Below are positions 2,970-48,969 of a stretch of 64,000 nucleotides of DNA, one piece after another. This stretch comes from Macrostomum lignano (lineage: Eukaryota), in assembly GCA_002269645.1 (NCBI GenBank), contig NIVC01000934.1, forward strand, positions 210,166 through 274,165, in the 5' to 3' direction. Every line of letters starts with the position of its first letter. Position 1 is the stretch's first letter. The translations under genes were made by a program, and so were the position numbers. A model generated the notes under the pieces. That model made no database searches. It saw nothing but the letters and a program-made list of their open reading frames with translations, and had not been told where the DNA came from.

Positions 2970-3906
2970 TTCTATTTGGGGATATCGGTTCGAGCAGGAA
3001 AGGGTGGGAAAAATGAAAAAGTTGGAATTCAGCTACACTGAGATGCATCCAAAAACAGACATTGAATATTTCCAGATTTATGAAGACAATGCGCGGAGAA
3101 GGGTCGGTTCTGCATTTCTGAGCTGCCATGTAACAGGTCCTTGGACCGAGAATGATACGCAGAGCATATCCGCACAGGTGAGTCAGAACGCATTAAATAT
3201 AAACATTTTGTACAGGGATCTGAATGGCAATAATGCTATGCTGACAGGAAAGACATTGTCAAGATCATCGAGATTCAAGGTTCATCGTTTGGTCTTGTTA
3301 CAGTCGAACCGTGCGGTGGTGCTTTGAAATGATGTAGGGGCATGAAGGTATCACATACTGCGAGCTCAAGGACCAGCAGCTGCCTGAAACTTTGACTGCA
3401 TGCCGCCTCTGCTGAGCGCAGCTTTCCAACACACTTTTCGAATGCTACCATTGCTGTATGACGAAGAACCCGACCGAACTAATGGATGCGGCTTCATCAG
3501 TAAGGCCGCCTATTACTCCTTAAAACAGGGGGGGGGGGGATAGCTGCCCATGCCTGGTACTTTATGTCGCTTCAAAAGTACCTGAACTGACAAATAGCAA
3601 ACACTTCTTACCTGCGTAACCTGTCTCTTTTATCTCTCATGTGCCTGCAAGAGAGCTCTCTGGACTCCGCTTTTAGATAGGCGGACTTCAGATATAGGAA
3701 GCTCTCAGCTTTGTTGGCCTTATTATGAGCTATCTCAGCTTATATTTGCAGACTGCCAGAATACGCATGGACAATAATGTGTTTTTGTACTGGCATCTTC
3801 ACAGATTCACAAGTCCACCAAGTGTTCCAGCTCGTAATATATTCTTGAATTTCGCATGCTTGCGTTGCTCTGTTCTGATAGCACAGCAGACATTTTGCAT
3901 TTTGCT

Positions 3907-4290
3907 TCAACTGTCAAGCTGAAGTTCTATTGGCTCTTCTGGCACCTCTGTTACCTCTAGCACTTCCGGTACTTCTGGCATTTCTGGTGCTTCTGGTGCC
4001 TCTGGTACTTCTGCAGCTTCTGATATTTCTTGTACTTCTGATATTTCTTGTACTTCTGATATTTCTTGTACTTCTGATATTTCTTGTACTTCTGATATTT
4101 CTTGTACTTCTGATATTTCTTGTACTTCTGATATTTCTGGTACTTCTGGCACTTCTGGCACTTCTGGCTCTTCTGGTACTGCTGGCACTCCTACTGTTAA
4201 AGCGCCATTTTGTAGCTCAAAAGACACAAACGTAAAATGCAGAGCTCCTGGTTACGAGTATTTTCATTTAGTTTAAAAGTTTATTTGATT
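3907..4290. repeat. Duplicated flanking module A (copy 1) containing an 18-bp minisatellite (tacttctgatatttcttg)
   Basis: Same flanks (caactgtcaagctgaagttctattgg ... agctcaaaagacac) recur at 6882-7800 and in part at 13320-13500. Confidence 0.8.
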
Positions 4291-4295
4291 CATTT

Positions 4296-5158: not shown

Positions 5159-5484
5159 ATTGGATGTGCTTGCCACTTTGCAGAAGTACTTTTATATCTG
5201 TTAACTGTTGTCACGACTAGTCAAGAACAGTCGAGGATTAGGGATTTAGGTCGGGATTCCGTCCGAGCACTATCATAGGACGGATACTAATGTATACCAG
5301 ATGAACTTAGAGCACGCATTAGGCATATTTAGCAGAACACTGACATTCACCGAGATTTAAAAGCTAAGTTTGAGATGCTAAATCTGAATATTGCTTATTA
5401 TTGTTAAATAATATTTGCCAAAAAGTTCAGAAAAATGCCACAGCTCAGATGCCAATTAGAAGAGCCAGCAGAGCGCACAGGCAG

Positions 5485-6273
5485 TCAATGATGGATGGAC
5501 AGCAGAATGAGACAGAAGTGCAGGACTTGCCACGGCCTCGTCCAGAGGACACCGGCGTCATCAGGATTCCCGATGGCATCGAGCACAACTCCAGCGGTGC
5601 TGAAGCTGCGGAGCTCGATGCAGCAGCCCCAGAAGGAGAACGGAACGCGGAACAGAAAGGCGAATATGGCGAGCAAAAGTGCGCAGGCGGATGGTAGCAG
5701 CAGCTTGATGAGGCTTCCTAGTGGGACAAATTTCTTGAAGGCGTAGAGATACTGGGTTCGGAGAGCGTTCAGTGGGATATTGTGCAGCAGCGAGATGAGC
5801 AGGCTGAGCAGCAGGGCGCTGCGGCCAGCCCGGATTCTCTTTAGCTGTTGATCCGAGAGTCGCTTTCGTCTGCGGCCGGTCTGGACTCTCCTGTTGCTGA
5901 TCCGTAAGTCGCTTTTGTCTGCAAATTTACTGCTTCAGGGTAATGGAAGAGTTCAATGTAACAGAGCTCAATTTAAAGGCAGCTAACCTTCTTCGCGAAC
6001 GGTAGTTACACAGCAGCAGGAGGTGCTGAACACAATCAGTACGCCTAGGAGCAGAATGCCAGCAATCACTACAAACAGAATGTACAGCGGTTGCAGATGG
6101 CTGATCTTGGCGGTGCAGTCTCTGTCAGAGCAGGAGCAGTGAGATGTCGACAGGTACAAAATCATGACACCTGGAAGGATCAGCCAGCTGCCCAATCGTT
6201 TTTGAAAGGATTCAGCGTTGCGGCCTTCAATAGCAGCTTCGATTGCTCCAGGTATTTCGGCGGCCACTTCCAT
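5485..6273 (-). pseudogene. 5-TM family copy 1 (exons 6273-5988, 5918-5485), damaged: 25-codon in-frame deletion and 4-bp frameshift
   Basis: Paralog of the copies at 8286-9183 and 14411-15544. GT-AG 69-nt phase-1 intron; spliced length 720 nt. Duplicated atgg at 5491-5498 gives an early TGA; the ancestral stop is at 5445-5447. Confidence 0.7.
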
Positions 6274-6881
6274 GATAAATTGAATTTCTTGGTCCGACCG
6301 GGCGTAGCTTGGTTGGGTGTTAAAATCAGTGGGTCTCGGCTCTTGTGGCCCTTATGTAATGCGGGGCGGGCTGCCTCTGACCCGCCAAGTGTGATCGATA
6401 TTTTCAGTTAGTTCCTAGTTCCTAGATAATCCAGCCCGTTCTCTTATGAACTACGGAGCTTAGGCATGCATGTCCGAAACGCTATTTTTAGGCACTGCGT
6501 TCGGTTTCTCTGTTAACCGCCGATTTCGGAAGTTGAACCGGGCTCAGCTGCGTACAGCTGGCTAATACGGAACTACGTGTGTGCAGCAGTTGTGCGAAAA
6601 TATTTCGGCGACTATCTTTTTCCAAAAAAATTTCACTAGTCTTTACCAACTAATAGCCAGGGTTGCATTATAAATATATATAATACCGGCTTATCGAGAA
6701 AGTATCCATTTTACTAAATTATTATTTTATCCGTACTCACCGACGATTCGAGATTAAGAAAGTGTCATGCTGCTGCCAGTAGAAGCTGCCATTTGCTCAA
6801 TAATTTAAAAAGCCAGACTGACTATAAGGCACAGCTTAAAGCTGATGGGGTTTTGCAGTGTCCACGGAGCCAGCAACTTCA

Positions 6882-7800
6882 ACTGTCAAGCTGAAGTTCT
6901 ATTGGCACTTCTGGCCCTTTTGGCACCTCTGGTTTACTGGTTACTTCTGGCACTTCTGGTACCTCTGGAACCTTTTGGTACTTCTGATTACTTCTGGCAC
7001 TGCTGGCACTCGCACTCCTTTGGTACTTCTGGTTACTTCTGGTTTCTTCTTCTGGTTTCTTCTGGTTTCTTCTGGTTACTTCTGGTTACTTCTGGTTTCT
7101 TCTTCTGGTTTCTTCTGGTTTCTTCTGGTTTCTTCTGGTTACTTCTGGTTACTTCTGGTTACTTCTGGTTTCTTCTGGTTACTTCTGGTTACTTCTGGTT
7201 TCTTCTTCTGGTTTCTTCTGGTTTCTTCTGGTTTCTTCTGGTTACTTCTGGTTACTTCTGGTTACTTCTGGTTACTTCTGGTTACTTCTGGTTACTTCTG
7301 GTTACTTCTGGTTACTTCTGGTTTCTTCTTCTGGTTTCTTCTGGTTTCTTCTGGTTTCTTCTGGTTACTTCTGGTTACTTCTGGTTACTTCTGGTTACTT
7401 CTGGTTACTTCTGGTTACTTCTGGTTACTTCTGGCACTCCTTTGGTACTTCTGGCACTTCTGGTACCTCTGGAACCTTTTGGTACTTCTGATTACTTCTG
7501 GCACTGCTGGCACTCCTTTGGTACTTCTGGTTACTTCTAGTTACTTCTGGTTTCTTCTGGTTACTTCTAGTTACTTCTGGTTTCTTCTGGTTACTTCTGG
7601 TTTCTTCTGGTTACTTCTGGTTACTTCTGGTTACTTCTGGCACTTCAAGTACCTTTGGTACTTCTGGCACTTCGTGGTACAATACTTCCGGTACTCCTAC
7701 TGTTGAAGCGCCATTTTTTAGCTCAAAAGACACAAAGATAAAGTTTTGCACAGGCAGAGCCTTGATTAGGAGTATTTTCGTTTCATTTGATGCGTGTGCC
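6882..7800. repeat. Duplicated flanking module A (copy 2) with an expanded 9-bp-based minisatellite (tacttctgg/tttcttctgg)
   Basis: Flanks homologous to 3907-4290; internal block at ~6941 repeated at ~7447. Confidence 0.85.
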
Positions 7801-8285
7801 ATTGTGCATAAGTAGTTATTATTTATATCACTTTTTAGCAACTTTACTTGAAGGAAAGGTGCTGTCACGACTAGTTAAGAACAATCGGGGATTTGGGTCG
7901 GGATCTCCTCCGAGCAACTATGGAATTTTAGGTTCGCATGAAGTCGTGAGTAACAAAATAGTGGCATTCACAGTGATTTAAGAGCTAAGTTTGATTTACT
8001 GAATCTGAATATTGCTGGTAATCTTGAAATAAATGAGAGAACAAAAATTAACTTGTTTTTATTTACTTTAATTCAATTGCCAATGCATTTCGACCCTTGT
8101 AGGTCATCGTCAGGGCAGTAGTGAAATTGAAAATTTTAATAAACAGTTGAATAAATATACCTGTAATAAGTTGATTACACAATATAAATTAATGTACGTA
8201 GTTTTCAATCGAAACAAGTTAACACACGGTGCGAGCAACTCTACCAGAATCTTGAAAGAATCTTTAAGTTCAGAGAACTGCAACC

Positions 8286-9183
8286 TCAGATGCCAATTAC
8301 AAGAGGCAGCAGAGCGCACAGGCAGTCAATAATGGACAGCAGGATGAGGCAGAAGTGCAGGACGCGCCACGGCCTCGACAGCAGGACATTGTCATCAGGA
8401 TTCCCGATTGCAGCCCGCACCACTCCAGCGGTGCTGAAGTCGCGGAGGTCGCTGCAGCGGCCCCAAAAGGAGAACGGAACGCGGAACAGAAAGGCGAATA
8501 TGGCGAGCAAAAGTGCGCAGACGGATGGTAGCAGCAGCTTGATGAGGCCTCTTAGTGGGATAAATTTCTTGAAGGCGTAGAGATACTGGGCTCGCAGAGC
8601 GTTCAGCGGGACAGTGTGCAGCAGCGAGATTAGCAGGCTGAGCAGCAGGGCGCTGCTGCCAGCCCGGATTCTCTTTAGCTGTTGATCCTTGAGTCGCTTT
8701 CGTCTGCGGCCGGGCTGGACTCTCCTGTTGCTGATCCGTAAGTCGCTTTTGTCTGCAAATTTACTGCTTCAGGGTAATAGAAGAATTTAATGTAACAAAG
8801 CTCAAATTAAAAGGCAGCTAACCTTCTTCGCGAACGGTAGTTACACAGCAGCAGGAGGTGCTGAACACAATCAGTACGCCTAGGAGCAGAATGCCAGCAA
8901 CCACAACAAACACAATGTACAGCGGTTTCAGATGGCTGATCTTGGCGGTGCAGTCTCTGTCAGAGCAGGAGCAGTGAGATATCAGCTGCTCAGGACACGT
9001 TACGTTAAAGGTCAACGTCTGTAGCTCCGAGGCAGCGGTGCAATCTAGCACGAACTGCGACAGGTACAAAATCATGGCACTTGGAAGGATCAGCCAGCTG
9101 AACAATCGTTTCTGAAAGGATTCAGCGTTGCCATCTTCAACAGCAGTTTCGATTGCTTCGGGTATTTTGGCTGCCACTTCCAT
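8286..9183 (-). CDS. Unknown ~5-TM Cys-loop membrane protein, copy 2 (exons 9183-8823, 8752-8286; 275 aa)
   Basis: Donor GAAG|gttagc, acceptor tttgcag|AC, 70-nt intron; 828 nt in frame. Five hydrophobic stretches, a Cys-rich loop with NVT sequon, and a TSCCC motif. Hydrophobic ORF conserved in four copies. Confidence 0.75.
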
Positions 9184-10179
9184 GATGAATTGAATTTCTA
9201 TTTCAGTGATAACTGAACTGCGGTTTAATAAATTCACTAAAGAGTTATCAGTTAGTTTCTAGGTAATCCAACCCGTTCCCATTATAAATTATAGAGCTTA
9301 AGGCATGTAAGTCCGGCCTCCGTACAGCTATTTTTAGGTATTGCGTTTGGTTTCTCTGTCAACCGCCGATTTCCGGAGTTGAAGCCGGCATCAACTGCGT
9401 ACAGCTGGCAAGCATTGAACTAAGCGTGCATGTTTTGCGCGCAAGTCTTTCTGCGACTGTCTTTTTCCAAGAAATTTCACTGGTTTTCTTTATCTGGTGA
9501 CTAGGATTGTATTATACATGTATACGGGCTAAAATGTGCAAGTTATCCAGAAATTATCTGTCCAAGTAAATTATAGTTTTATCAGTATTCAACGATTCGA
9601 GATAAAGTACGAGCTAAGTGTTGTGCATTTAGACAGTAGGAATAGCCTGTGCCAAAGGGGTTTTGCTCTTTTATTTAATAAGCTGCACTGACTATAAGGC
9701 ACCGCTTAAGCCTCAGTTGCGCACGGCAGTTTTTTCCGTTGCGGCTGGGTGTCAGATGCTGCAAGTCAGTCGATTTGTTCCGACACACGGCGGCTGTAAA
9801 ACCCGCTGGTTGGCTATGCAAAATTCTATTTGCCTGCCCGTTTTGCCAGGCACAATGGCAAGAGTTGAAATTAATTAGCTCCTTATTAATGCATCCTACC
9901 AGCCCTGCCGAAAGCTCATGCGCGCAGAGACGTTGAATGCACAGTACGAGCTAAATTGTCCACCAAGATGCACATGCCAACTTCGGAGGCAGATGTTAAG
10001 GGTTACGGCCAGAAATAGCTGAACTAACCTGAAATGCGACAGTGCTTGCTTTTTCTCTCGCCGAAAATATACAAATAAACACCCCTGTTTAGCTTAAAGT
10101 GTTTTTATAAAAGCAGCTCAGCTCATAACTCAGCTCAAATTTTTTTCTTGTCAAAACTCTACAAACTTGTCGAGACTCG

Positions 10180-12956
10180 ATGGAGGCCAACTTAATAGCG
10201 GCTCTGGAGACCGGAGACAGCGAGCGACTGTTGTTCCTGTGCTGCGAAGTCGGCTCCAACATCACCCTAACTGTTGGCGGATATCGTGAAGGCAGAGTGG
10301 AGCAGACCCTGGTGCACCACATCGCATGCAGGACCAACAGTCCGCACTGCCTGGAGATCCTGATCCACCGGTTCGGACCGAGTTGCCTCACCTGCAGGAA
10401 CCAGTACAACCAGATGCCCGTGCACCTGGTCGCGCTGGTCCAGGATGAGACCTGGCTGCCCATGATTCTCACTGCTGCCGGCAGAGACTGCTTCAACCAG
10501 CCCGGCCAGTTCGGCCGGACAGCTGTGCACGCGGCCGCCTCGAACGTACGGACGGGTGCGGTCTTTGACTGGCTGATCAGAACGTGCGGGCGCGACTGTC
10601 TCGCCGTTCAGGACGACTACGAAGACACTCCCGTGCACCAGGCCGCCATGAAGAGGGACTACCGGTCCATGGAGCTCATCAAGTCGCTGATCGGTCCTTC
10701 TGTCTTCTATTTCCAAGGTCGATGCCAGCGAACTGCCATCCACTGCGCCGCCATGAACAAACAGGACAACTCGAGTCTTAAGTGGCTGGTCGGTGAATGC
10801 GGCAGCGGCTGCCTGACTCTGAAGGACGGCCAGGGCAGCACGCCGCTTCACCTGGCTGCGCTCTACCAGAGGGCGGACTCGCTGCAGTTCCTCGCTGACC
10901 AGGTCGGCACGGAGGCTTTCTCAGCCAAGAACAACAGCGGGTGGACGGTGGTGCACCTGGCTGCGCAGAATACAGTGAGCGACTCCGCTCTCGCCTGGTG
11001 CATCAGCAACTTGGGCCCGCACTGCCTGGTCGCCAGCGACTCACGTGGCCGAACACTAGCTCACCTGGCCGCTCAACACCAAAGTGTGGAATCGTTGAAT
11101 CGCATTAAGGACTCGCTTGGCCCATCGGCTTTTCAGCTTCCTGACAGCGAGGGAAACTCGGCGTCCAACTACGCTAGAAGGAACAGCAGGAGTAGCCAGG
11201 TGCTCAGCTGGATGACGCAGACGCAGAATCAATTTCCAGCGCAGGAACCGTCGCTGGGATTGGATTCGAAGCTGCCAATCAGCACGTACTCCGATTCCGC
11301 CTCCCCCATGCAGAGCGGATTGGATTCGAAGCTGCCAATCAGCACGTACTCCGATTCCGCCTCCCCCATGCAGAGCGCGGCCAGCGTTGTTCAAGTGAGT
11401 AAAAATCGACGCGATGACAGCTCAGGTACAGCCGTCTCGCCGGTTTCTGGAGCTTCAGCAGCTTCTACCTCACAACCGGGACGAAGAAGCTCTCAGATGG
11501 AGCTTTCGGCCACGCGTTCGGGACGCCAAGGCTCGGAGCAGCCACCTTCGTTCTCAAATAGAACGTCATCAGAGTATTCGTACGTCTGAGAACAAATTTG
11601 AACATGCTTCAATTTTAACCATTCTACGAGCGTACGTTACTTCCAAACTAAAAAACATCAACTTTCGCTATTTTAGGTGCCCACCGGAACTGGATCCAAG
11701 CTTTGCTAGCTGGAAATTTATTCTAGACTGTGGCAAGAAGCACCCAATCGGAAGGGGCGGCTTCGGCAAGGTGTACAAGGTGCTGACTGACAAGCTTCAG
11801 ACGGTGGCCGTCAAGATTGTCAAGCTCAATGACACCAAGAACCCCACAAAGCTTGCAAAGGCAATTGAACGCGAGAGGCTGGGCATTGAGATTCTGAAAG
11901 GCATTCGACACCTGAACATAATGCAATTTCTCAAGTATGAGCGCTCCAGCACCGGCCAGTTCTGCATCTTCACCGAGCTGATTGCCGGCCACAGCCTCCT
12001 GGACTTGATGAACCTCCAGGGCAGGCCTTTCGATGAAGAGGCAGTAAAGAAGATCTCGGTGCAGGTAAATCCCATGTTTGATTCAGATTATGTTTTATTA
12101 GAGGCTGTGTGCACCCTGGTGCACTTTAAGCGACATTGTCACAACCGGCGAGAGGCATTACTGCTCATTCCACCGACTCCCCTGAGCAGGCACACAGGCG
12201 CAAGGATATGTACGCAGTCATACGCACAGGCACACACTCACACAGGAGTGTACAGCGGCCCTAACTTTAGGCATGTACACTTCACTGTGCCTTGGGGGTT
12301 GGCCTTCAGGGACGTTGATTGCACGAGCAGAGCCAAGCGAAGATTCCAATTTAGCATAAAATTAATGTGACTGCGCTTGGAATCGAGCCTGGGCCGCTGG
12401 CACATCAGAGTGCCACGCTAGACCACTAGGCCGCGGACCCCTCAGAACTCAGGTCAGAACTTCAAATATCTGGGCGGAATTCCAGGTGTGCACCGCTCTC
12501 AACTTCCTGCACAATTGGACAAGGCCAGTCGTTCATCGGGACATCAAGTGTTCGAACATAATGCTCACTCACGAAGGCGTTGTCAAACTCATCGACTTCG
12601 GCCTGGCAAAGCAGATCGTCTCAACATTCATGGAGGTGAGCACCGATCACCTGGGAGGCACCTGGTACTACATGGCTCCCGAGCTGTTCAGGGACGACGG
12701 CCGAATCACCTACTCGCCAAAGACTGACGTCTGGGCGTTCGGCTGCGCAGTGTTCGAGATGCTGGAGATGAAGCCGCCAAACGGAGAAGTGTGCGTGCAC
12801 CTCATTCCAGTTCGAATTTGTCATAGAGAGATGCCGGAGCTCCCGGCTCGAACCTCCAGCAGTCTGAAGGACTTCTACCGCCGGTGCGTGGAGCGAGACG
12901 CCGCAATGAGAGCGGACACGGCAGATCTGCTGCGTCACGGCTTCCTGGCAGACTGA
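10180..12956 (+). CDS. Ankyrin-repeat + Ser/Thr kinase (STE/MAP3K-like domain); exons 10180-11579, 11677-12064, 12486-12956; 752 aa
   Basis: N-terminal ankyrin repeats (TAVHAAA, TPVHQAA, TPLHLAA, TVVHLAA). Kinase motifs GRGGFG, VAVK, HRDIKCSN, DFG, APE and DVWAFG are intact. GT-AG introns keep frame (2259 nt). Confidence 0.9.
12170..12440 (-). mobile_element. tRNA-derived SINE-like element in kinase intron 2
   Basis: Minus strand reads GGCCTAGTGGTCTAGCG (A box) ... GGCTCGATTCC (B box). The body (gtgtacagcggccct..ggcatgtacac..gccttgggg..ggccttca) recurs inverted at 55140-55320. Confidence 0.6.
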
Positions 12957-14410
12957 TTGCAGTTGGGACCTGCCGTACATCACTGAGTTTAATCAGACAA
13001 TAATTTCAGCTTTACAAGCTATTTCTTTCACTTACTGCACTTAAACAATATTTATTCAGGAATAGGTGGAGCCCGGCTTCATTTGCTAAGCACAGTTGCT
13101 TCAGTGTGACAAAAAAAATTGTCTCGCATTGCTTTACCCAAGTCTGAACTCTCTGTTGTATTGCACATAAATACAATAATGCTATAATTGCTAAATACGT
13201 TCGGAAATAAAATTACAGGGTCGGTAAACTCAGCCCGCGGGACACATAACGGGTCGTGAAGCCTCCCTATCCGGCTCTTGGGTCCTTTGAAACTCCACAA
13301 TAGCAATCCATCTGCTCTCAGATAGGTGGCACTTCTCGTACTTCTGGTGCTCCCGGTACTCATGTTAAAGCGGCATTTTATAGCTCAAAAGATACCAACG
13401 CAAAATTTCGCACACACAGAGCCCTTGGTTGTGAGTGTTTTTGTTTCGTTTAAAAGTTTATTTGATTAATTTGTTGCATTTTGCATTGTGCATAAATAGT
13501 GATGATCTACGCTCGTATATTGTTTTTTAGCAACTTTACTTAAGGGAAAACTGTTGGTTGTCACGACTAGTCAATAACATTCGGGGATTTCGAATTTGGG
13601 TTGGGATCTCCCCCGAGCACTGCTACTCGTATAGGACAGGTAAAAGTGGACAACTGATAAATTTAGGGTTTGCATGAAGTGGTGTTTAACAAAACACTGA
13701 CATTCACTGAGATTTAAAAGCTATGTTTGAGATGGTGAAAGCCGTTGCAGATGGGGTTTTTACCGCTTCTAATACCTAAAATGCTTACTATCTATAAATA
13801 AAACTATGGAATTACCGTTGGTACAGTGTGCCCCTGGTAGCTCCAGTGCCCGAGCTGCAAGACACTGTTGGCTACTGATTCTAAGCCCAAAACGTCATTA
13901 TTAATGATCGAGAGAGGAATCCTGGATTCCTTCACGGATTTACTGTCTATCACGACTCACTGACGCATCACGTTTATATGTCTAGGCATCACATCTTAAT
14001 TTCCCCTGGGACTTCCCCCCTTTTTCTTTGGTCTCGACTGTTTGGGGACTGGCACTTGGCAATTTGCCCTTCCGCTTCCCACTGCAACACGCTTCATTCA
14101 GTCAAACACTGTTGAGACTGCTCCTCGACAAATGACTAAGAGAAAGCAAGGCTAAGAATTGATTAAAACGAGAACAAAAGAAAAGCAGGTTAACATTTTT
14201 TGGTCCTCGCGCTCCACTGCCGGTATACTCATACCATTTTAAATGTATTTCCACTGGTTCGCGTTTAGTGCAATAACGTATGACATATTAAAAAAAAATT
14301 TACAGCATAACAAAGTGAGAAGTTTTTGGCCGGAATTAATTAGCAGAATATCAGTATTTTTGTCAGCCAGGTATATAAACTTTGCTAAAAGTTCAGAGAT
14401 CTGCCACACC

Positions 14411-15544
14411 TCAGATGCTAAGCAGAAAAGCCAACAGAGCGCACAGAAAGTCGATCATAGACAGAAGGATGAGACAGAAGTGCAGGACTCGCCCCGGCCT
14501 CGACAGCAGGACATTGTCACCAGGATTCCCTATGAAATCCCGCACCACTCCAGCGGTGCTGAAGCCACGGAGGTCGCTGCAGCAGCCACAGAAGGAGAAC
14601 GGAACGCGGAACAGAAAGGCGAATATGGCGAGCAAAAGTGCGCAGGCGGATGGAAGCAGCAGCTTGATGAGGCTTCCTAGCGGAAGAAATTTCCTGAAGG
14701 CGTAGATATACCGAGCTCTGAGAGCGTTCAGTGGGATATTGTGCAGCAGCGAGATGAGCAGGCTGAGCAGCAGGGCGCTGCGACCGGCCCAGATTCCCTT
14801 ACTGTTGATCGGAGGGTCGCTTTTGCTGGGGCCGGCCTGGGCTCCCCCGCCGTAGGTCGCAGGGTCACTTTTGCTGGGGCTGGCCTGGGCTCCCCCGCCG
14901 TCGGTCGCAGGGTCGCTTTTGCTGGGGCCGGCCTGGGCTCCCCCGCCGTCGGTCGCAGGGTCGCTTTTGCTGGGGCCGGCCTGGGCTCCCCCGCCGTCGG
15001 TCACAGGGTCGCTTTTGCTGGGGCCGGCCTGGGCTCCCCCGCCGTCGGTCGCAGGGTCGCTTTTGCTGGGGCCGGCCTGGGCTCCCCCGCCGTCGGTCGC
15101 AGGGTCGCTTTCGTCTGAAAATTTAATGCTTCAGAGTAGTAAAAGAATTTAGTGTAACAAAGCTTTAATTAAAGGCAGCTAACCTTCCTCGCGAACGGTA
15201 GTCACACAGCAGCAGGAGGTGCTGAATACAATCAGTACGCCTAGGAGCAGAATGCCAGCAATCACTACAAACAGAATGTACAGGGGCAACAGATAAATGA
15301 TATGAGCGGTGCAGTCTACGCCAGTGCAGGAGCAGTAAGACGTCAGCTGCTCAGGACACGTTACGTTAAAGGTCAACGTCTGTAGCTCTGAGGCAGCAGT
15401 GCAATCTAGCACGACCTGCAACAGGTACAAAATCATGACACCTGGAAGGATCAGCCAGCTGCCCAATCGTTTTTGAAAGGATTCAGCGTTGCGGCCTTCA
15501 ATGGCAGCATCGATTGCTTCAGGTATTTTGGCTGCCACTTCCAT
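14411..15544 (-). CDS. Unknown ~5-TM membrane protein, copy 3 (exons 15544-15184, 15114-14411; 354 aa) with a 16-aa repeat in the loop
   Basis: 69-nt GT-AG intron at the same position as in the paralogs; 1065 nt in frame; six 48-bp units encoding ATDGGGAQAGPSKSDP. Confidence 0.75.
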
Positions 15545-16092
15545 GATTAATTGAATTTCTATTGCAGAGATACCTGAACTGTAGTTAAATAAATTCACTG
15601 ACGAGTTTTCAGTCAGTTCCCAGATAGTCCAACCCGTTCCCTTTATAGATATCAGAGCTTGGGGGTGGTGCATGCAAGTCGATACAGGTATTTTTAGGCG
15701 TTACGTTTTGTTGGCTGGCAAACACGGAACTTCGTGTGCATCACTTTCGCGAAATCTCAGAAAGAACTCTCTGTTGCATTGTACATAAAAACAATAAAGG
15801 AAAAAAGCGCTATAGCGGTTCAGAACAAAATAAGCGGACTTGACTGCTCTTTTGGAAGCATTTGCTACTGTGTACGGCTCTCGGACTGCTCAGTGCGAGC
15901 TCAATATAGATGCTGAGCTGTGATGTGCATGCAAGCAAGCTGTGCGCGTGTCGAGATTTCTGTAATAACCTAACTTTTTACCTCGATGTGGGACTAAAAT
16001 TGCTTGCACAGAGAAGCTACCTGAAAGGCCATTTTACCATTAAGCAACAGTTTTGAAGGCCCAGTAGTTTAGCTCACCTGGCCTTCAGTTCG

Positions 16093-16740
16093 ACGCTTAG
16101 CGCTCCTGACACTTGGGGGCTCCTGACACTTGGGGGCTCCTGACACCTGGGGGCTCCTGACATCTGGGGGCTCCTGACACCTGGGGGCTCCTGACATCTG
16201 GGGGCTCCTGACACCTGGGGGCTCCTGACATCTGGGGGCTCCTGACACCTGGGGGCTCCTGACATCAGGGGGCTCCTGACACCTGGGGGCTCCTGACACC
16301 TGGGGGCTCCTGACACCTGGGGGCTCCTGACACCTGGGGCTCCTGACACCTGGGGGCTCCTGACATCTGGGGCTCCTGACACCTGGGGGCTCCTGACATC
16401 TGGGGGCTCCTGACACCTGGGGGCTCCTGACATCTGGGGGCTCCTGACACCTGGGGGCTCCTGACATCAGGGGGCTCCTGACACCTGGGGGCTCCTGACA
16501 CCTGGGGGCTCCTGACACCTGGGGGCTCCTGACATCTGGGGGCTCCTGACACCTGGGGGCTCCTGACATCTGGGGGCTCCTGACATCTGGGGGCTCCTGA
16601 CACCTGGGGGCTCCTGACATCAGGGGGCTCCTGACACCTGGGGCTCCTGACACCTGGGGCTCCTGACACCTGGGGGCTCCTGACACTTGGGGGCTCCTGA
16701 CACTTGGGGGCTCCTGACATCTGGGGGCTTCTGACACCTA
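16093..16740. repeat. 17-18-bp minisatellite (gctcctgacacctggggg)
   Basis: Directly visible. Confidence 0.95.
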
Positions 16741-17129
16741 GAAGATTTCTGACATCCAAACTGTGGCATCTCGCAAATTTAGTCAGCCCAAAAATAATAA
16801 AATAATTTAGAAAAAAACTGTTTGCCAGGCCGTGACAAAATTATTTTAGTTAGTCATCAAACTAGTTCTATATGGTACGCTCATTAAAAATAGTTCGTTC
16901 AAGAAGATAAAATATTTCTGGAAAGATACTCATAGGGTTGCAAAAAACAGGAAAAATGCTATTAAACCTGTTGACATCTTACAGAGTGCTGTTTCATGCT
17001 CTTGCAATAGGGACACTCGGACACAGAAATTGTTTTCTGATGTATCAAACTGCCGCAGATGCCACTGTAATGGTAAAGCCTGCAGCGGTGGAAGCTGACC
17101 AGTTGTGTGGTGTAGCATTGGGCTGAGCT

Positions 17130-17550
17130 AGGAGAGGAGAGGAGAGGAGAGGAGAGGAGAGGAGAGGAGAGGAGAGGAGAGGAGAGGAGAGGAGAGGAGA
17201 GGAGAGGAGAGGAGAGGAGAGGAGAGGAGAGGAGAGGAGAGGAGAGGAGAGGAGAGGAGAGGAGAGTAGAGGAGAGGAGAGGATGAGAGGAGAGGAGAGG
17301 AGAGGAGAGGAGAGAGAGGAGAGGAGAGGAGAGGAGAGGAGAGGAGAGGAGAGGAGAGGAGAGGAGAGGAGAGGAGAGGAGAGGAGAGGAGAGGAGAGGA
17401 GAGGAGGAGAGTAGAGGAGAGGAGAGGAGATGAGAGGAGAGGAGAGGAGAGGAGAGGAGAGGAGAGGAGAGGAGAGGAGAGGAGAGGAGAGGAGAGGAGA
17501 GGAGAGGAGAGGAGAGGAGAGGAGAGGAGAGGAGAGGATAGGAGAGGAGA
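17130..17550. repeat. (GGAGA)n microsatellite
   Basis: Directly visible. Confidence 0.95.
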
Positions 17551-17702
17551 AAGACAGGTGCAAAAGGACGAGAAATCAAGAAAATGAAATACCATGAGTT
17601 AAGCAGTTTGTCGTTTATAGCAGTTAATTTTGCCAGTCATATTCTAAGTCAATAACAAGCATCCTATACAGCACTGTTCAATAAGAAATCAACACTGAGT
17701 TC

Positions 17703-18858
17703 TCATAGAAGCAGGGCCAAAAAAGCGACAACAATTTCAACCAGCATCAGCACGAACAGGAAGTAGTGTACAACCAGCCACGGTTTTTTCCTGTCTGCAC
17801 TGCTCGCTGCGACCGACGCCACTGAAATGCTGCTCCAATCCCAGCGGTCGCAGCTGCCACAGAAGGAGAGCGGAATCCGGAATATGAAGGAGAAGCAGGC
17901 GAACAGGATGCTGCTCACCGATGGCAGCACCAGCTTCGCCAGGCTGCCCTGCGGCAGGTGCCTTCTGAATGTGCCGAGATACTCAGCTCGGATTGAGTTC
18001 AGCGGGATGATATGCAGCAGCGAGATGAGCATACTGAGCAGCAGGGCTGCGCGGTTCAGCCTCATCCATTTGACTCTCGCGTAGCCAGGAATCTCTGGAT
18101 GGGGGAATGGTTATGTATGGAATGCGTTTAGAGGGCGCTGTGATCCTTTATCAGCTGCTGACTCTGGACTCAGTGACTTTTTGGTTTAGCAGCGGGATAG
18201 AGCTCAGTTTGAGCTTAGTAGGGAAGGTAGATACGAGATCCCACCTTGGGTGGCAGCGGGATAGAGCTCAGTTTGAGTAATAGGGAAGGCAGATACGAGA
18301 TCTCACCTTGGGTGGCAGCTTCCGTGTTCGATCCCGTCCAATTTGGATTAATGTCTGAAATTGATGAATTTTTTCTCTATCAATGATGCCATGCTTAGAG
18401 GGTTTAAGGATGCTGGCAATGATGCTCGTGAGCTCGTAATTGAATTCATGGAGACATTGTCTGCCTCAGTTGAAAGTTGGCTCACCTCGATACTCGGAGC
18501 TGCAGCAGGATATAATAAAGATGACAAGCAAACAGAACAGGACCAGGGAGGACATCACCAGGAAGAAGACATAGATCGGGCGCAGGTGGTTGATGCTGGC
18601 AATGCATTTTCCGTTCTCGCAGCTGCAATATCGCAAAAGGTCTTCGGGACAGGTGGTCGAATTGAATGGAAGAATTTCTGTGTAGCAAATGCAGTCTAGC
18701 ACGAACTGCAACATGTAGATGATGACAATGCCGGGCAGGAAGAACCACTTGAATAAGCAGTTGCACCGCGTTTGGCAGTCGGAGTCGGGCTCCCTCGAAT
18801 TGCGATGCTCCTCAGTGGCAGTTTCTATGGCCGTGGGAATCTTCACTACAATCTCCAT
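17703..18858 (-). CDS. Unknown ~5-TM membrane protein, copy 4, diverged (exons 18858-18486, possibly 18354-18307, 18094-17703)
   Basis: Conserved motifs LDC..NSTTCPE..YCSC..C, ALLLSMLISLLHIIPLN and RIPLSFCG. Donor CGAG|gtgagc and acceptor catccag|AG keep frame. Confidence 0.7.
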
Positions 18859-27170: not shown

Positions 27171-29662
27171 ATGGGCTCCTCTAACCAGGATGACCCGCTG
27201 CCCAAAGAGGTGTACTCCAGGTGGGCGGACTGGCTGCTAGGCTCCTCGGAGTCTCTGTGGGCCCAGGAGCCGCCGGACCAGCAATGGCCGGACAGCAGCA
27301 AGGAGGAGGACCTGGAGATGCGACTGCCAGCTGAGCTGCTCAGCGACATCAACAATGCCACGGCTGAGCTGCCGCCCACCATGCCGCCGCCGCTGCTGCC
27401 GCCTCCACCTCTGCAGCAACAGCAGCAGCAACAGCAGCCAGTGCAGCTGCCTGCCCACCACCAGCCGCTGATGCCGCCCGGCCCCAGGCCTCTCGAAACC
27501 GGCGGCCATCCGGATCGTCGGGAGCGGACAACGTCGACCAGTTCAGCGGCCACGCGTGCGCTGCGCCTGTCTCAGATTCCTCCGCTGATGCCGCAGCCGC
27601 CGCCCAACGCAGCCAGGCACCAGCCGCATCAGCGCCCAGCCTCCTCCAGCAGCGTTGGCGCCACCGCTGCACCAGTGCGACAGCCGCGCCGACGGCAGAA
27701 CCGGCAGGCGACACCGCCGGCAGCTGTGGCAAACGCCGGGGTGGCTGCCAGCGTCGCGGGCGTCTCCGCGGCGTCGGCACCGGTTTCTGCTGCTGCCAAT
27801 TGCGGTCACTCCGCGACTGCCGGCGCTGCGAACTCCGCGCCGGCCGAAGAGATGCCGCCACCTCCGCCGCCGCCGCCGGCTCCATCAGCGCCGACACCTG
27901 TCGGGCCGGACAGCAGCCGGAAGCCGACCTACTCGGACATCATCAAGAAGCAGAAGGCCGCCGCCGCTGCCGCTGCAGCCGCCGCCGCCACTGCGGCTGC
28001 TTCGAGCTCTGCGGGCTCTGCAGCCGGGTCGCAGGCTGCCTCGTCGCCGAGTCATCAGCGGGCGGCGGCAGGCGACAGCCCAGTCAGGACTCAAGCCGCC
28101 GCTGCCCCAGCAGCACCTGGCAAGCGAGAGGCGTCCGCTGCAGCTGGACCTGCCGCGGTTCGAAATGCCGGCCACCCTGCAGGCGTAAATTCTGGGACTG
28201 CGGCCGCTCAGCCGTCTGGGACCGCGGCAACGCCAGCGGCTCCGAGCTCCAGCGACTCGACCAACTCGACCTCCGTCACCGGGCGGCGCGGCAATCGCCA
28301 GACATCTGCTGGCCGGCCGCTAGCCATCCCGCGCCGCAGGCCACAAAGTCTCAGCATCATCATGCAGTCCAGCCTCCTGGTCCCAATCATCATCATCAAC
28401 AGCAGCAACAGCAGCAGAAGCTGGCCGATGGCGCGCAGCAGCGATCCGCTTCCATAGACTTGTCTCAGCCATCGCCGCTGCCGGCCCAGCCGCTCAGCGG
28501 CAGCAGCGAGGACCGGCGCCAGCAGCAGCTGCTCAACAACGCCAAGCCGTTGCCGCCCGGCCACTGCGGCGGCGGCTCCGCCCCGGCCACCGCCGGCTTC
28601 ATCAACAATCTGCACCGGGGCTCCTGCGACAGCAGCAGCCTGGACGACAGCGCCGGGAGCGGCAGCGGCGTCGGTGGCAGTCGCCAGGCTCTGGCCGGCC
28701 GGCCCAACAGCGCATCCGGCAAGTCCGGTGCGGCGGCTTCAGCGGCCCGGCGTCGGCAGACTGCAGGCGGCGCCTCTTCCGCCTCCACAGGACGGTCCGG
28801 TGGAGCTTCAGGCGGCTCCAGCGCCTCGGGTAGCGGCGGAGGCGGCAGCGGCCTTGTTGAAGGCGCCTCGCTGCTGCTGGTGGCCTTCTTCCAGCTGCTG
28901 CTGTGCTGCGTCCGCTCCCTGGCCGCGGCCGCCGTTGGCCTGGCGCTGTCCTGCCTGGCCTGGTGCCGCCAGCACCGTCAGCAGCGTCGCCGGCGCCGCC
29001 GCCCAGCTTGGCTGCCGGCCGGCCTGCAGGCAAACGTGGAGCTGCCGCTGACCGCCGAGGACACGGTGCGCCGCCTGCTGGCCTGCCAGGACCACCGCGA
29101 CGCCTACAGCGTGCTGGGCGTCAGGCGGGACGCCGAGCAACGGGAGATTGTGCAGCACTACCGGCACCAGCTCCGCCTGCTGCAAGCCGCGCCAGCGGCC
29201 ACCTCACCGGGGGTGCACGAGGCCGCCCAACTGCTGCAGCGCGCCTTCGCCCTGCTGGACGGCCACGCCAACAGGCGCGAATTCGACAGCGGGGCGGCCG
29301 GTGGCCACGCCGACATGGCGCAGCTGGCGGCCGACCTGCAGCTGGCGGTGCACCGCCTGCCCTGCGCCAGGTGCTCCGGCCGGCACCTGTGGCTGCCCAC
29401 CGACCTCAGCCCGCAGGCCGCCCGCTACTGCTCCGCCTGCCGCGTCCGCCACCCGGCCCAGGACGGCGACCTGTGGGCAGAGTCGCGCCTGCTGGGCCTT
29501 CGCCGGGTCTTCCTGGCCTGCCAGGACGGCCGGGTCTGCCAGGTGAACGAGCTGGCCAGGTGCCAAGCTGAGCTGTTCGCCAAGCTGCAGCCCGACTGCC
29601 ACCGCTGCCAGCTGCGCCGGGCCGAGGCAGCCCCGCCCTACCGGTTCGTCTACAGAAAGTAG
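27171..29662 (+). CDS. DNAJC14: DNAJC14/DRIP78/Jiv-like protein: low-complexity N-terminus, TM segment, HPD-less J-like domain and Jiv90 Zn domain; one frameshift at ~28260-28340
   Basis: C-terminal CARCSGRH..ARYCSACRVRHPAQDGDLWAESRLLG matches the Jiv90 signature, preceded by J-like AYSVLGV..EIVQHYR..LQRAFALL. The N-terminal ORF (frame of 26997) must shift -1 to join ORF 27800-29662. The start codon is a best guess. Confidence 0.8.
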
Positions 29663-34439: not shown

Positions 34440-36088
34440 ATTAACTATACATTTTACTGTTTTGACCTTGGGTACTTTGGTATAGCAGATGAAAGGCTAG
34501 GTATAATAGGTGATGTTTGTCTTTGACATTTTAGTGTTTAAAAAGCAAAGACAAAGATTGGCAATAGTTGTTAATTCATAATGTTGATTCTTCTACCCTG
34601 TTGTCTTATCTTGCATCCCAGAATTAATGTTATATAAATATATTGGTTTGGGCCTTGCGCCTATTAATTGCTCTGTTTATTATAGGTGCTTCTTACTCCT
34701 AGGAGTGTCCTCTGAGTAAGCCTCTGTATAAGCACAAGCCATCTTCTCAAACTCATTTTGTCATGCCAAGCCTCTCAAGTGATGCAATGCCTTCCTAAGA
34801 CACTGCTCCTGACCTGCCTTCTGGGACATCCATTAGGAGCTCAATGTCAATGGTCATTCCAGCATGTCACTTAGAGGCAAAGTTGAGATTCAGCTAGCCT
34901 CATTTGATGGCAACTGCCTAAACTATAGCTGTGAGGTTCAGGAAGATGCTCTAGTATAGACAAGGCAGGTCATCCTGCAGAATGTAGAGGTATAGGATCA
35001 CCTTGGGTGCCACATCTCAAGTGACGTCTGTGAATGCCTTCTCAAACTCTATTGCCTCCTGAGCAATGGCCATGACACAGAAAGGCAACTGGACTAGGTT
35101 GGCCACATAGTCTCGTCATATGGACCATTGACATTCCATTGTAGGCATAGATGAGAGCTACCTGGGTTTGCAAGGCCACAGATGAGGTCATGTCAATCAG
35201 GGAGGCCATTACCCTCTTGGGACTTTTAATGATTATAATAACAGTCTATATATATTTTATAAAGAAAAATGAATGTAAAAAATTTCTAAATCTAACTTAA
35301 GTCCCTATTCAAAGTGAATTTAGCCCATACTAATAGCCAAAAAAGAGAAAAAATGCAATTAAACATGGTGTGAAAGTCATAGCCATATAAAGCTTTGAAA
35401 ACCTTATATTGATTGATATTGCTACCTACTATTGCTGTCTAGGCATTCAGGGGTTGCATTGCTAAAGCCTTGCTAAGAGCAGGCCTACTAAGCTGTATGC
35501 AGGTACTAGTCATGCTGCCACACTTTAGCAGTTCTGCAAAGTGGTATAGGTTCAAGTTGCATGTGCTTGCACATTTAGCAGAGCCCAAATGCCAGCCAAT
35601 TTTTTATCAATTATAATAGCTTCTGTAAGCATCTATATTGATGCACTTAAACTAATTTTGTTTTAATTTGCAAGTTGCTAAGTAACAACTTCTATAGTTG
35701 TTATAGCATCCCCTAGCTACGAGGGGCTAGCTACGCATAGTCATACGAGTAAGTTTTAGGCTTTCTTATTACTATTACGAGCTATGCCCAAAACAGGGTA
35801 AGTTAGAAAGCATTGCAGTTGCCCATTGCCTCTAATTATCCAACCCTCTATCATCGGTGTGAGCATTTGGTTCTGCTTTACTAATTGCTCACCTGAGCGC
35901 TGAGTTCCTCTCCCTCAATCAGCTAGTTCGCTGCACCTGTCACCTCCACCCCGCTGCCCCTTTAATTGCTGGGCCAGCCATGCAGTCAGTTTGGTGACAG
36001 AAGCCGCTGTACACCCTGCTCAGGAGTACATAAGCATGAATGCCTGCTTATGCAATGCAACCCGCAGCCAAGCAGCCAGCCAGCAGCC

Positions 36089-48342: not shown

Positions 48343-48379
<37 letters not shown>

Positions 48380-48934: not shown

Positions 48935-48969
<35 letters not shown>

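What the first reader, a model, noticed from the sequence alone, without database searches (positions are those of the whole stretch)
5445..18858. Tandem array of four genes for an unrecognised 5-TM, Cys-loop membrane protein
Seen: four minus-strand paralogs (5485-6273, 8286-9183, 14411-15544, 17703-18858) share a phase-1 intron after TM2 and give in-frame spliced ORFs of 239-354 aa. Conserved layout: TM1; loop C-x(14)-CP-x(6-7)-CxC-x(4)-C with an N-glycosylation sequon (NVT/NST); TM2; juxtamembrane SCC(C); variable loop; ALLLSxLISLLHxxPLN; TM4; RxPxSFxGxC; TM5. I do not recognise the family; the tetraspanin CCG motif and the 7-TM GPCR layout are absent. Inference: a lineage-specific, fast-evolving cell-surface receptor or channel family. 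Local birth-and-death with a variable loop resembles immune, allorecognition or chemosensory loci.
Basis: partly seen in the sequence, partly recalled or inferred. Interest (0 to 1): 0.82.

Follow-up and report, generated by a model that had tools for sequence, protein, structure and literature searches.

The report
Flatworm-only membrane protein gene cluster
Four neighbouring genes in the flatworm Macrostomum lignano encode a small membrane protein with several membrane-spanning segments that has no detectable relative outside this species; one copy is tightly conserved and the other three are duplicating, swapping sequence and decaying, which is ordinary for a species-restricted gene family whose function is still unknown.

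Summary
Four minus-strand paralogs sit at the stated coordinates, each with a GT..AG phase-1 intron after the second hydrophobic segment, giving ORFs of 239, 275, 354 and 254 aa.

The window is Macrostomum lignano contig NIVC01000934.1. Copy 2 is identical to GenBank BOX15_Mlig015542g1, a model built from RNA-seq, so it is transcribed and spliced as proposed.

No relative was found in Pfam, in PDB sequences, or in an exhaustive HMMER scan of 1.84 billion proteins. The AlphaFold model was unusable (pLDDT 45). One UniProt member is labelled "TMEM273"; that label fails the test.

Copy 4 is under strong purifying selection: 10 synonymous to 1 nonsynonymous change across three versions of the locus. 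Copies 1-3 are young and relaxed (dN/dS 0.6-1.0), mosaic by gene conversion, and partly dead; copy 1 is a pseudogene.

The "variable loop" is basic, follows the CCC motif and is probably cytosolic. It is built from a 48-nt coding minisatellite with 1 to about 7 units. This weakens the receptor or allorecognition reading.

Most likely this is a Macrostomum-restricted, glycosylated, palmitoylated membrane scaffold or auxiliary subunit. That function is inferred, not shown.

The parts
17703..18858 (-). c4, the conserved founder-type gene (254 aa). Exon 1 is 18858-18486, the intron is 18485-18095 (391 nt), and exon 2 is 18094-17703 including the stop.
   Evidence: This is the only in-frame AG acceptor that gives a full-length ORF. 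The gene is 47% identical to c2. Across three versions of the locus it shows 10 synonymous and 1 nonsynonymous substitutions. The exact protein is absent from the 15-billion-protein collection, so it is unannotated.
18307..18354 (-). Possible 48-nt in-frame cassette micro-exon of c4 (DINPNWTGSNTEAATQ). The acceptor is tttcag|AC and the donor is CAAG|gtgaga. Including it would give a 270-aa protein.
   Evidence: Read directly from the sequence. The frame is kept in L002, with one I>V change and one synonymous change. Untested because no RNA-seq tool was available.
18189..18319 (-). 62-bp minisatellite inside the c4 intron. Each unit carries a donor-like CAAG|GTGRGA.
   Evidence: TRF reports 2.1 copies in the window. 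I counted about 22 copies by eye in L002, while the flanking exons stay nearly identical.
14411..15544 (-). c3 (354 aa). Exon 1 is 15544-15184, the intron is 15183-15115, and exon 2 is 15114-14411.
   Evidence: Spliced ORF. It is 76% identical to c2. The exact protein is not in public collections.
14809..15111 (-). 48-nt (16-aa) coding minisatellite in the c3 loop (SDPATDGGGAQAGPSK, 6.3 copies).
   Evidence: TRF gives period 48, 6.3 copies and 96% matches. The array is in frame. The equivalent gene in L002 has no expansion. P0002 and P0003 differ by exactly one 16-aa unit.
8286..9183 (-). c2 (275 aa), the transcribed and annotated member. Exon 1 is 9183-8823, the intron is 8822-8753 (70 nt), and exon 2 is 8752-8286.
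   Evidence: The spliced translation is 100% identical to PAA74616.1/PAA86177.1, BOX15_Mlig015542g1. That annotation is derived from RNA-seq transcript assembly (PMC5730564).
5485..6273 (-). c1, a pseudogene or truncated copy (239-aa ORF). Exon 1 is 6273-5988, the intron is 5987-5919, and exon 2 is 5918-5485.
   Evidence: A 75-nt in-frame deletion removes C48, C63 and the N-glycosylation sequon. A 4-nt insertion gives ...SIHH* while the ancestral stop still aligns downstream. The same insertion, plus loss of the promoter and exon 1, is seen in L002 and L003. The copy is a mosaic of c2-like and c3-like tracts.
9200..9709 (-). Duplicated upstream (promoter and 5'UTR) block of c2. Paralogous blocks lie at 6290-6839 (c1) and 15561-15712 (c3).
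   Evidence: Self-blastn: 6416-6839 against 9253-9709 is 71% identical; 8693-9352 against 15056-15712 is 83% identical.
6877..7783 (-). Duplicated downstream block of c2, holding a 10-bp satellite (TACTTCTGGT, about 61 copies). Paralogous blocks lie at 3905-4295 (c1) and 13327-13734 (c3). The tandem duplication unit is about 3 kb.
10180..12956 (+). Unrelated ankyrin-repeat protein kinase gene that interrupts the array between c2 and c3. It is context only, not a family member.
   Evidence: Pfam Ank_2 at 5.7e-26 and Pkinase at 4.1e-31, spread over three ORF pieces. It holds the same position in L002 and L003.

Best explanation
SHOWN:
- These are real protein-coding genes of a family restricted, as far as public protein data go, to Macrostomum lignano.
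- Each encodes a protein of about 250-275 aa with five hydrophobic segments.
- c4 is the constrained, older member.
- c1-c3 are a young subfamily produced by tandem duplication of a roughly 3-kb unit. They evolve under relaxed constraint, exchange tracts by gene conversion, change the copy number of a 48-nt coding minisatellite in one loop, and die; c1 is dead.

INFERRED topology and mechanism:
- The N-terminus is cytosolic, because K/R lie just before the first hydrophobic segment.
- A 40-residue extracellular or luminal loop is held by disulfides (5-6 Cys) and N-glycosylated at a conserved sequon.
- Cysteine clusters lie at predicted cytosolic membrane boundaries: SCC(C) after the second segment, FxGxC after the fourth, and CxxxCxC before the first in c4. 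These would be S-acylated.
- The variable, basic or repeat-rich loop after the CCC motif is a disordered cytosolic linker.
- The most conserved element is the third hydrophobic helix, which carries a Ser/Ser/His/Asn polar stripe. It would mediate helix-helix packing with itself or with a partner.

I therefore think the proteins act as small palmitoylated membrane organisers or auxiliary subunits. In that respect they would work like tetraspanins, MS4A, FXYD or claudin-like auxiliary subunits without being related to them. I do not think they are ligand-diversified receptors.

The confidence of 0.6 covers the whole statement. The SHOWN part alone I would put near 0.9, and the scaffold or auxiliary-subunit function alone near 0.35.
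For: - Gene structure and four copies.
- Species, plus transcription and splicing of c2.
- No relatives anywhere.
- Long-term constraint: dN/dS of 0.29-0.30 between c4 and c2/c3/c3'.
- Recent constraint on c4: 10 synonymous to 1 nonsynonymous change. By my own arithmetic, the binomial P is about 7e-6 against the roughly 75% nonsynonymous sites taken.
- Relaxed young copies: dN/dS 0.64-1.02; 7 synonymous to 12 nonsynonymous for c2 and 2 to 6 for c3' between locus versions.
- Gene conversion.
- Pseudogene.
- About 3-kb duplication unit.
- 48-nt coding unit and compensated frameshift.
- Hydrophobic segments, and charge and Cys counts per loop.
- The sequon is conserved at one alignment column in proteins only 47% identical.
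Against: - Function is wholly inferred. No expression site, partner or phenotype was found; a search for the gene identifier in the supplements of six papers returned nothing (two of them hold no supplement text).
- Topology is not settled. The first and third hydrophobic segments are marginal on a crude insertion scale. The short loop between the third and fourth segments holds 4 K/R in 16 residues, which would fit a 4-TM topology in which the third segment stays cytosolic.
- The structure model is unusable: pLDDT 44.8.
- Only c2 has transcript evidence. c3 and c4 are not in GenBank's protein set.
- Absence from other flatworms rests on annotated proteomes only. Genomes and transcriptomes of other Macrostomum species could not be searched.
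Confidence: 0.6

Rival explanations
1. One reading: a fast-evolving cell-surface receptor or recognition family (immune, allorecognition or chemosensory type), in which local birth and death and a variable loop generate recognition diversity.
For: - The array is tandem, with a pseudogene and copy differences between locus versions.
- Young paralogs have dN/dS of 0.64-1.02.
- The loop varies in length among paralogs and alleles.
- An odd number of conserved Cys (five) in the outer loop of c1-c3-type proteins could allow intermolecular disulfides.
Against: - There are only three intact genes per locus version, and no further clusters appear in the protein databases.
- The variable loop is basic, follows the CCC motif, tolerates a frameshift, and is probably cytosolic.
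- The Cys-loop dN/dS is below 1 in all three young pairs.
- c4 is almost invariant.
- The exposed surface would be only about 40 + 16 residues.
Confidence: 0.1
2. An oligomeric pore or channel. The invariant third helix, with its Ser159/Ser163/His166/Asn171 stripe, would line a conduction path in a multimer, in the way CALHM, Orai or MS4A-type small channel subunits work.
For: - The third hydrophobic segment is the best conserved part of the protein. It has polar residues spaced three to five residues apart, which would lie on roughly one helical face (my reading), and a conserved Pro.
- Its synonymous divergence is also the lowest of any segment.
Against: - There is no similarity to any channel family in Pfam or PDB.
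- The Foldseek hits are noise: best E is 0.67, on a model with pLDDT 45.
- A polar stripe fits helix packing equally well.
Confidence: 0.1
3. Only c4 matters. The c1-c3 subfamily would be functionally dispensable duplicates drifting towards pseudogenes, and c2 transcription would reflect an inherited promoter rather than any need for the protein.
For: - c1 is dead in all three locus versions.
- The c3-type gene in L003 has a 4-nt deletion at the end of exon 1.
- Synonymous to nonsynonymous counts are 7:12 for c2 and 2:6 for c3' between versions.
- A frameshifted stretch is tolerated in the loop.
Against: - The transmembrane cores of c2, c3 and c3' remain intact. The combined transmembrane segments give dN/dS of 0.49 for c2 against c3.
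- The c2 ORF is identical in two locus versions.
- Indels in the loop always restore the frame.
- The single-contig 4-nt deletion could be a long-read assembly error.
Confidence: 0.15
4. A divergent member of a named family: TMEM273 (as UniProt labels one member), or MS4A, tetraspanin, claudin/PMP22 or FXYD.
For: - UniRef names A0A1I8I1Q1 'Transmembrane protein 273'.
- There are weak, non-significant matches of the second transmembrane segment plus the Cys/basic stretch to phospholemman (E 0.18-0.47), TMEM52 (0.04) and TMIE (0.26).
Against: - Genuine TMEM273 proteins are about 105-aa vertebrate proteins with a single hydrophobic stretch, carrying Pfam PF14986.
- No flatworm member hits PF14986 at E<=10.
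- The profile-profile probability is 0.08%.
- No other Pfam family reaches its threshold.
Confidence: 0.02

Closest known systems
Tetraspanins, MS4A/CD20 and claudin-like auxiliary subunits (small palmitoylated polytopic membrane organisers)
   Same: Similar size (about 250 aa). They share several hydrophobic segments, one disulfide-bonded glycosylated outer loop, juxtamembrane cysteine clusters suited to S-acylation, and a tendency to form tandem gene clusters. The general properties of those families are from established knowledge.
   Different: There is no sequence or profile similarity. The CCG motif is absent, the large Cys loop is the first loop rather than the second, and the claudin W-GLW-C-C motif is absent. 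There are five rather than four hydrophobic segments, and essentially no C-terminal tail.
FXYD/phospholemman (single-pass regulators of the Na,K-ATPase)
   Same: This was one of the weak database matches. A transmembrane helix is followed by palmitoylatable Cys and a basic stretch, and it aligns to residues 87-134 of c2.
   Different: E is 0.18-0.47, which is not significant. There is no FXYD motif, and the flatworm protein is multi-pass rather than single-pass. The match is an analogy for the juxtamembrane segment only.
TMEM273 (Pfam PF14986), the name UniProt attaches to one family member
   Same: Only a hydrophobic helix.
   Different: There is no PF14986 hit, and hhalign gives a probability of 0.08%. 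TMEM273 is a vertebrate protein of about 105 aa with one hydrophobic stretch. The label is an annotation artefact.
DRD4 exon-3 48-bp VNTR (a coding minisatellite in a cytosolic loop of a membrane protein)
   Same: An in-frame 48-nt unit whose copy number varies inside an intracellular loop without disturbing the transmembrane core. The DRD4 fact is from my own knowledge.
   Different: The protein and unit sequence are unrelated. Here the copy number differs among paralogs and locus versions; population polymorphism has not been shown.

Membership tests
This family itself (Mlig015542-type proteins) | Phase-1 intron after the second hydrophobic segment; C-x13/14-CP-x6-CxC-x4-C loop with an N-x-T sequon; SCC after TM2; ALLLSxLISLLHxxPLN; RxPxSFxGxC | tested here: met
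   All features are present in c2, c3 and c4. c1 lacks the first half of the Cys loop.
Tetraspanin (PF00335) | Four TM segments, a large second outer loop with a CCG motif, and a Pfam profile match | tested here: not met
   No Pfam hit at E<=10. There is no CCG motif, and the Cys-rich loop is the first loop.
MS4A/CD20 (PF04103) | Pfam profile match; four TM segments with both termini cytosolic | tested here: not met
   No Pfam hit at E<=10. The Foldseek match to CD20 chain 6vja_C has E 4.6 on a model with pLDDT 45, which is noise.
CALHM (PF14798) | Pfam profile match | tested here: not met
   No Pfam hit at E<=10.
Insect-type gustatory or odorant 7-TM receptors (PF08395, PF06151) | Seven TM segments; Pfam profile match | tested here: not met
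   At most five hydrophobic segments. No Pfam hit. Foldseek matches to Gr64a and Gr43a have E of 3-7, which is noise.
Claudin/PMP22 (PF00822) | W-x-GLW-x-C-x(8-10)-C in the first outer loop; Pfam profile match | tested here: not met
   The motif is absent from the loop and there is no Pfam hit.
Cys-loop pentameric ligand-gated channels (PF02931/PF02932) | An N-terminal ligand-binding domain of about 200 aa carrying the C-x13-C loop, followed by four TM segments | tested here: not met
   The N-terminus is 26-35 aa long and there is no Pfam hit. The word 'Cys-loop' in the finding's title is descriptive only.
TMEM273 (PF14986) | Pfam PF14986 match; a vertebrate protein of about 105 aa with one hydrophobic stretch | tested here: not met
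   No PF14986 hit for any member, including the one so labelled. hhalign against a 12-sequence TMEM273 alignment gives probability 0.08%.
FXYD (PF02038) | FXYD motif before a single TM segment; Pfam profile match | tested here: not met
   Only a non-significant PDB sequence match, E 0.18-0.47. No Pfam hit.
Five-pass, N-in/C-out, glycosylated and S-acylated membrane protein (the proposed layout) | Five membrane-spanning helices; outer Cys loop glycosylated; cytosolic Cys clusters acylated | tested here: inconclusive
   Five Kyte-Doolittle peaks, but the first and third are marginal on a crude Hessa-type sum, and loop charges are ambiguous. The AlphaFold model has pLDDT 44.8. Glycosylation and acylation cannot be tested with these tools.

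The most novel reading that the evidence does not exclude
The family is a Macrostomum-born class of polytopic membrane protein with a fold not yet seen. The young c1-c3 subfamily, with its gene conversion and 48-nt coding VNTR, would generate individual-specific variants. These would be used in cell-cell or partner recognition, for example sperm-recipient interactions in this hermaphrodite, in which reproduction-related genes are reported to evolve rapidly, or self/non-self discrimination.
Probability: 0.05. Interest if true: 0.7.

Novelty: new member of a known kind. Interest (0 to 1): 0.3.

Why it matters
As it stands, this is a well-documented example of something common in flatworm genomes: a taxonomically restricted family of small membrane proteins turning over by tandem duplication.

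Its practical value is threefold:
- It corrects annotation. c3 and c4 are missing from GenBank, c1 is a pseudogene, and the UniProt 'TMEM273' label is wrong.
- It separates one strongly constrained member (c4) from the relaxed young copies. That makes c4 the sensible target for RNAi or tagging in M. lignano, the only flatworm with routine transgenesis.
- It gives a compact case of a coding 48-nt minisatellite and a compensated frameshift tolerated inside a membrane-protein loop.

It would matter more only if expression or population data tied the variable copies to recognition or reproduction.

Tried and rejected
- **Pfam.** hmmscan of all members at E<=10 gave nothing real. TMEM52, DUF898, DUF6366 and TMIE appeared at E 0.02-0.26, all on the TM2-plus-Cys stretch and all below their cut-offs.
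- **PDB sequences.** Single-sequence and profile searches gave only chance hits: phospholemman and CaV3.2 at E 0.034.
- **Protein databases.** The word-indexed search of 5.8 billion clusters found only M. lignano proteins, and c4 alone found nothing. The exhaustive HMMER profile search of 1.84 billion representatives found one cluster, the family itself.
- **Structure.** AlphaFold2 with a five-sequence alignment gave pLDDT 44.8 and pTM 0.33. Foldseek against PDB gave a best E of 0.67, to a designed helical bundle. This route was abandoned and the second structure job was not used, because no deeper alignment can be built.
- **TMEM273 label.** Tested and rejected.
- **Metagenome scan for relatives.** None found.
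- **Expression data.** A literature search for the gene identifier found nothing. For six M. lignano papers the supplement search returned nothing; two of them hold no supplement text.
- **Rfam.** The scan of the whole window found nothing.
- **Alternative c4 acceptor at 18354.** Used as a plain second exon it runs into a stop. It works only as a 48-nt cassette exon.
- **Transposon or viral origin of the repeat unit.** Considered and dropped. The Pfam scan of the long ORFs between c2 and c3 returned only ankyrin-repeat and protein-kinase domains.

Full report
**What is there**

| Copy | Exon 1 | Exon 2 | Protein |
|---|---|---|---|
| c1 | 6273-5988 | 5918-5485 | 239 aa |
| c2 | 9183-8823 | 8752-8286 | 275 aa |
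| c3 | 15544-15184 | 15114-14411 | 354 aa |
| c4 | 18858-18486 | 18094-17703 | 254 aa |

Each exon 1 has a length of 3n+1, so the intron is phase 1. It falls right after the cysteine cluster that follows the second hydrophobic segment, and it has GT..AG ends. The introns are 69-70 nt in c1-c3 and 391 nt in c4.

tblastn finds these four copies and no others in the 64 kb window. Identity to c2 is 85% for c1, 76% for c3 and 47% for c4.

**Where it comes from, and whether it is expressed**

[quoted passage not shown] The window is contig NIVC01000934.1 of assembly Mlig_3_7.

The GenBank annotation of that assembly was built only from a genome-guided RNA-seq transcript assembly (StringTie/TACO, then TransDecoder). 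Transcripts overlapping repeats were filtered out (PMC5730564). So c2 is transcribed and spliced at the junction proposed.

The exact c1, c3 and c4 proteins are absent from a 15-billion-protein collection. c4 alone retrieves nothing. They are therefore unannotated; the repeat filter is a plausible reason for c3 and c4.

**Is it a known family?**

No test placed it in a known family.
- Pfam hmmscan at E<=10 gives nothing for c2 and c4. For the other members it gives only sub-threshold noise on the TM2-plus-Cys stretch.
- PDB sequence searches, single-sequence and profile, give only chance matches.
- A profile search of 5.8 billion clusters returns three clusters, all from M. lignano.
- An exhaustive HMMER scan of 1.84 billion representatives returns one, the family itself.
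- A metagenome scan finds nothing.
- AlphaFold2 on the five available sequences gives pLDDT 44.8, so the Foldseek output (best E 0.67) means nothing.

One UniProt member (A0A1I8I1Q1) carries the name 'Transmembrane protein 273'. I fetched genuine TMEM273 proteins, using a query sequence recalled from memory that proved 98% identical to human TMEM273. They all carry Pfam PF14986 and are about 105 aa long. The flatworm proteins do not hit PF14986, and a profile-profile comparison gives a probability of 0.08%. The label is an artefact.

**Evolutionary behaviour**

The Mlig_3_7 assembly holds three versions of this locus: the window, L002 (NIVC01000292.1) and L003 (NIVC01004203.1). This matches the redundancy that the genome paper attributes to the extra large chromosomes of the DV1 line. 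All three keep the same gene order: c4, a c3-type gene, the ankyrin kinase, c2, then c1.

The copies behave very differently.
- **c4 is tightly conserved.** Across the three versions it shows 10 synonymous and 1 nonsynonymous substitutions. About 75% of sites are nonsynonymous, so the binomial probability is about 7e-6 by my own arithmetic. Between c4 and c2/c3/c3', dN/dS is 0.29-0.30 with saturated dS near 1.6. The c4/c1-3 split is therefore old, and the protein has been under constraint.
- **c1-c3 are young and relaxed.** Pairwise dS is 0.11-0.23 and dN/dS is 0.64-1.02. Between locus versions, c2 shows 7 synonymous to 12 nonsynonymous changes and the c3-type gene shows 2 to 6.
- **Paralogs exchange sequence.** Several of the c2 replacements are the states seen in paralogs. 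c1 is an obvious mosaic: its 5' end and third helix are c3-like, and its middle is nearly identical to c2. That pattern indicates gene conversion.
- **c1 is a pseudogene.** It has a 75-nt deletion that removes two conserved cysteines and the sequon. It also has a 4-nt insertion that truncates the last helix. The same insertion is present in L002 and L003, where the promoter and exon 1 are gone as well.
- **One more possible casualty.** The c3-type gene in L003 has a 4-nt deletion at the end of exon 1. This could be real or a long-read assembly error.

Self-comparison shows a duplication unit of about 3 kb. It includes the upstream region and a downstream 10-bp satellite.

**The variable loop**

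The loop after the CCC motif is built from a 48-nt (16-aa) unit.
- P0003 has one unit.
- c1, c2, c3' and P0002 have two units.
- c3 has about seven; TRF reports period 48, 6.3 copies and 96% identity.

In c1 and c2, a +1 insertion followed by a +2 insertion puts about eight codons into another frame, turning SDxPINS into KRLKDQQL, and then restores the frame.

The loop holds 14 Lys/Arg in 44 residues in c2. Its dN/dS is about 1 or higher.

A segment that tolerates copy-number change and frame change while keeping the ORF open behaves like a disordered linker. Its position after a juxtamembrane Cys cluster, together with its charge, argues that it is cytosolic. This is inference, not measurement.

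c4 may carry a homologous 48-nt cassette exon at 18354-18307, which could not be tested. The rest of its intron holds a 62-bp minisatellite, with 2 copies here and about 22 in L002.

**Topology and likely mechanism (inferred)**

There are five Kyte-Doolittle peaks. The first and third are marginal on a crude insertion-energy sum.

Evidence that the first loop is outside:
- K25 and R26 lie just before the first segment.
- An N-x-T sequon is conserved at one alignment column in proteins only 47% identical.
- There are five to six Cys in the first loop.

Evidence favouring five spans, N-terminus in and C-terminus out: cysteine clusters sit at what would be cytosolic membrane boundaries in that model. 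These are SCC(C) after segment 2, FxGxC after segment 4, and CxxxCxC before segment 1 in c4.

Evidence the other way: the short, basic loop between segments 3 and 4 would fit a four-span alternative.

The best conserved element is the third helix, ALLLSxLISLLHxxPLN, with a Ser/Ser/His/Asn stripe.

Putting this together, I think the proteins are small, glycosylated, S-acylated membrane organisers or auxiliary subunits that pack through the third helix. The alternatives are a channel subunit, a recognition molecule, or, for c1-c3, dispensable duplicates. None of these is excluded by direct evidence.

'Unrecognised and lineage-specific' and 'local birth and death' are supported.

The analogy with immune, allorecognition or chemosensory loci is not supported:
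- The family is tiny.
- The variable part is probably inside the cell.
- The outer loop shows no excess of replacements.
- The most divergent member is strongly conserved.

**Novelty and interest**

No paper in the searched library (PMC open-access and bioRxiv full text) mentions the gene. The family has no Pfam entry or meaningful name.

It is a new family, but of a familiar kind: species-restricted tandem clusters of small membrane proteins are common, and this window is full of minisatellites. Nothing here would surprise a flatworm genomicist or open a long-standing question, so interest is modest.

**Limits**

- Genomes and transcriptomes of other flatworms could not be searched, so 'restricted to M. 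lignano' rests on annotated proteomes only.
- No RNA-seq, topology predictor or deep alignment was available.
- The dN/dS values use Nei-Gojobori counts on few sites, and gene conversion blurs the pairwise distances.

Noticed in passing
window 10180-12956 (+): An ankyrin-repeat protein kinase gene sits between c2 and c3 (Ank_2 5.7e-26, Pkinase 4.1e-31), spread over three overlapping or adjacent ORFs in different frames. It contains a perfect 60-bp x2 repeat at 11257-11377. It is not among the genes called for this contig in GenBank. It holds the same position in all three versions of the locus.
   Followed up: partly
window 36083-36535 (+); gene model from about 4706: An intronless nucleoside-diphosphate kinase CDS, 70% identical to human NME1. 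The GenBank gene model for it starts near window 4706 and so runs more than 31 kb antisense across the whole four-gene array. This may be a real long transcription unit or a transcript-assembly merge.
   Followed up: partly
window 27800-29662 (+): An ORF with DnaJ and Jiv90 domains (Jiv90 2.9e-22) lies in a very GC-rich stretch (GC 0.69 at 28-30 kb), flanked by AT-rich DNA (GC about 0.30 at 20-26 kb and 32-34 kb).
   Followed up: no
window 44902-46332 and 60907-62253 (-): Ryanodine receptor exons (RR_TM4-6 3.7e-35; RIH domain 3.2e-25). A large RyR gene appears to occupy the right third of the window.
   Followed up: no
window 49640-51477, 48317-49063, 16102-16739, 17130-17550, 7024-7640, and many others: The window is crowded with mini- and microsatellites: a 27-bp unit x67, GATT x187, a 17-bp unit x38, AGGAG x85, a 10-bp unit x61, and more. 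Many of the long mechanical ORFs, such as 49317-51755 (812 aa, no Pfam hit), and the extreme GC skew at 48-52 kb coincide with these arrays.
   Followed up: partly
UniProt A0A1I8I1Q1 (P0005), a c2-type protein from the older ML2 assembly: It is publicly labelled 'Transmembrane protein 273'. Pfam PF14986 and hhalign both reject any relationship, so the name should not be propagated.
   Followed up: yes
L003 4860-4900 (NIVC01004203.1): The c3-type gene in this version of the locus has a 4-nt deletion at the end of exon 1 (ACCGTTCGCGAAGAAG becomes ACCGCGAGGAAG), which shifts the frame. It is seen in one contig only, so it could be a true null allele or an assembly error.
   Followed up: partly
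window 17850-18047 against 5620-5817, 8454-8651 and 14579-14776: The stretch covering the third and fourth helices is the only part where c4 and c1-c3 are still alignable as DNA (70-73%). Its synonymous divergence (0.4-1.0) is well below the rest of the gene (above 1.2 or saturated). Either an old conversion tract or a nucleotide-level constraint could explain this.
   Followed up: no
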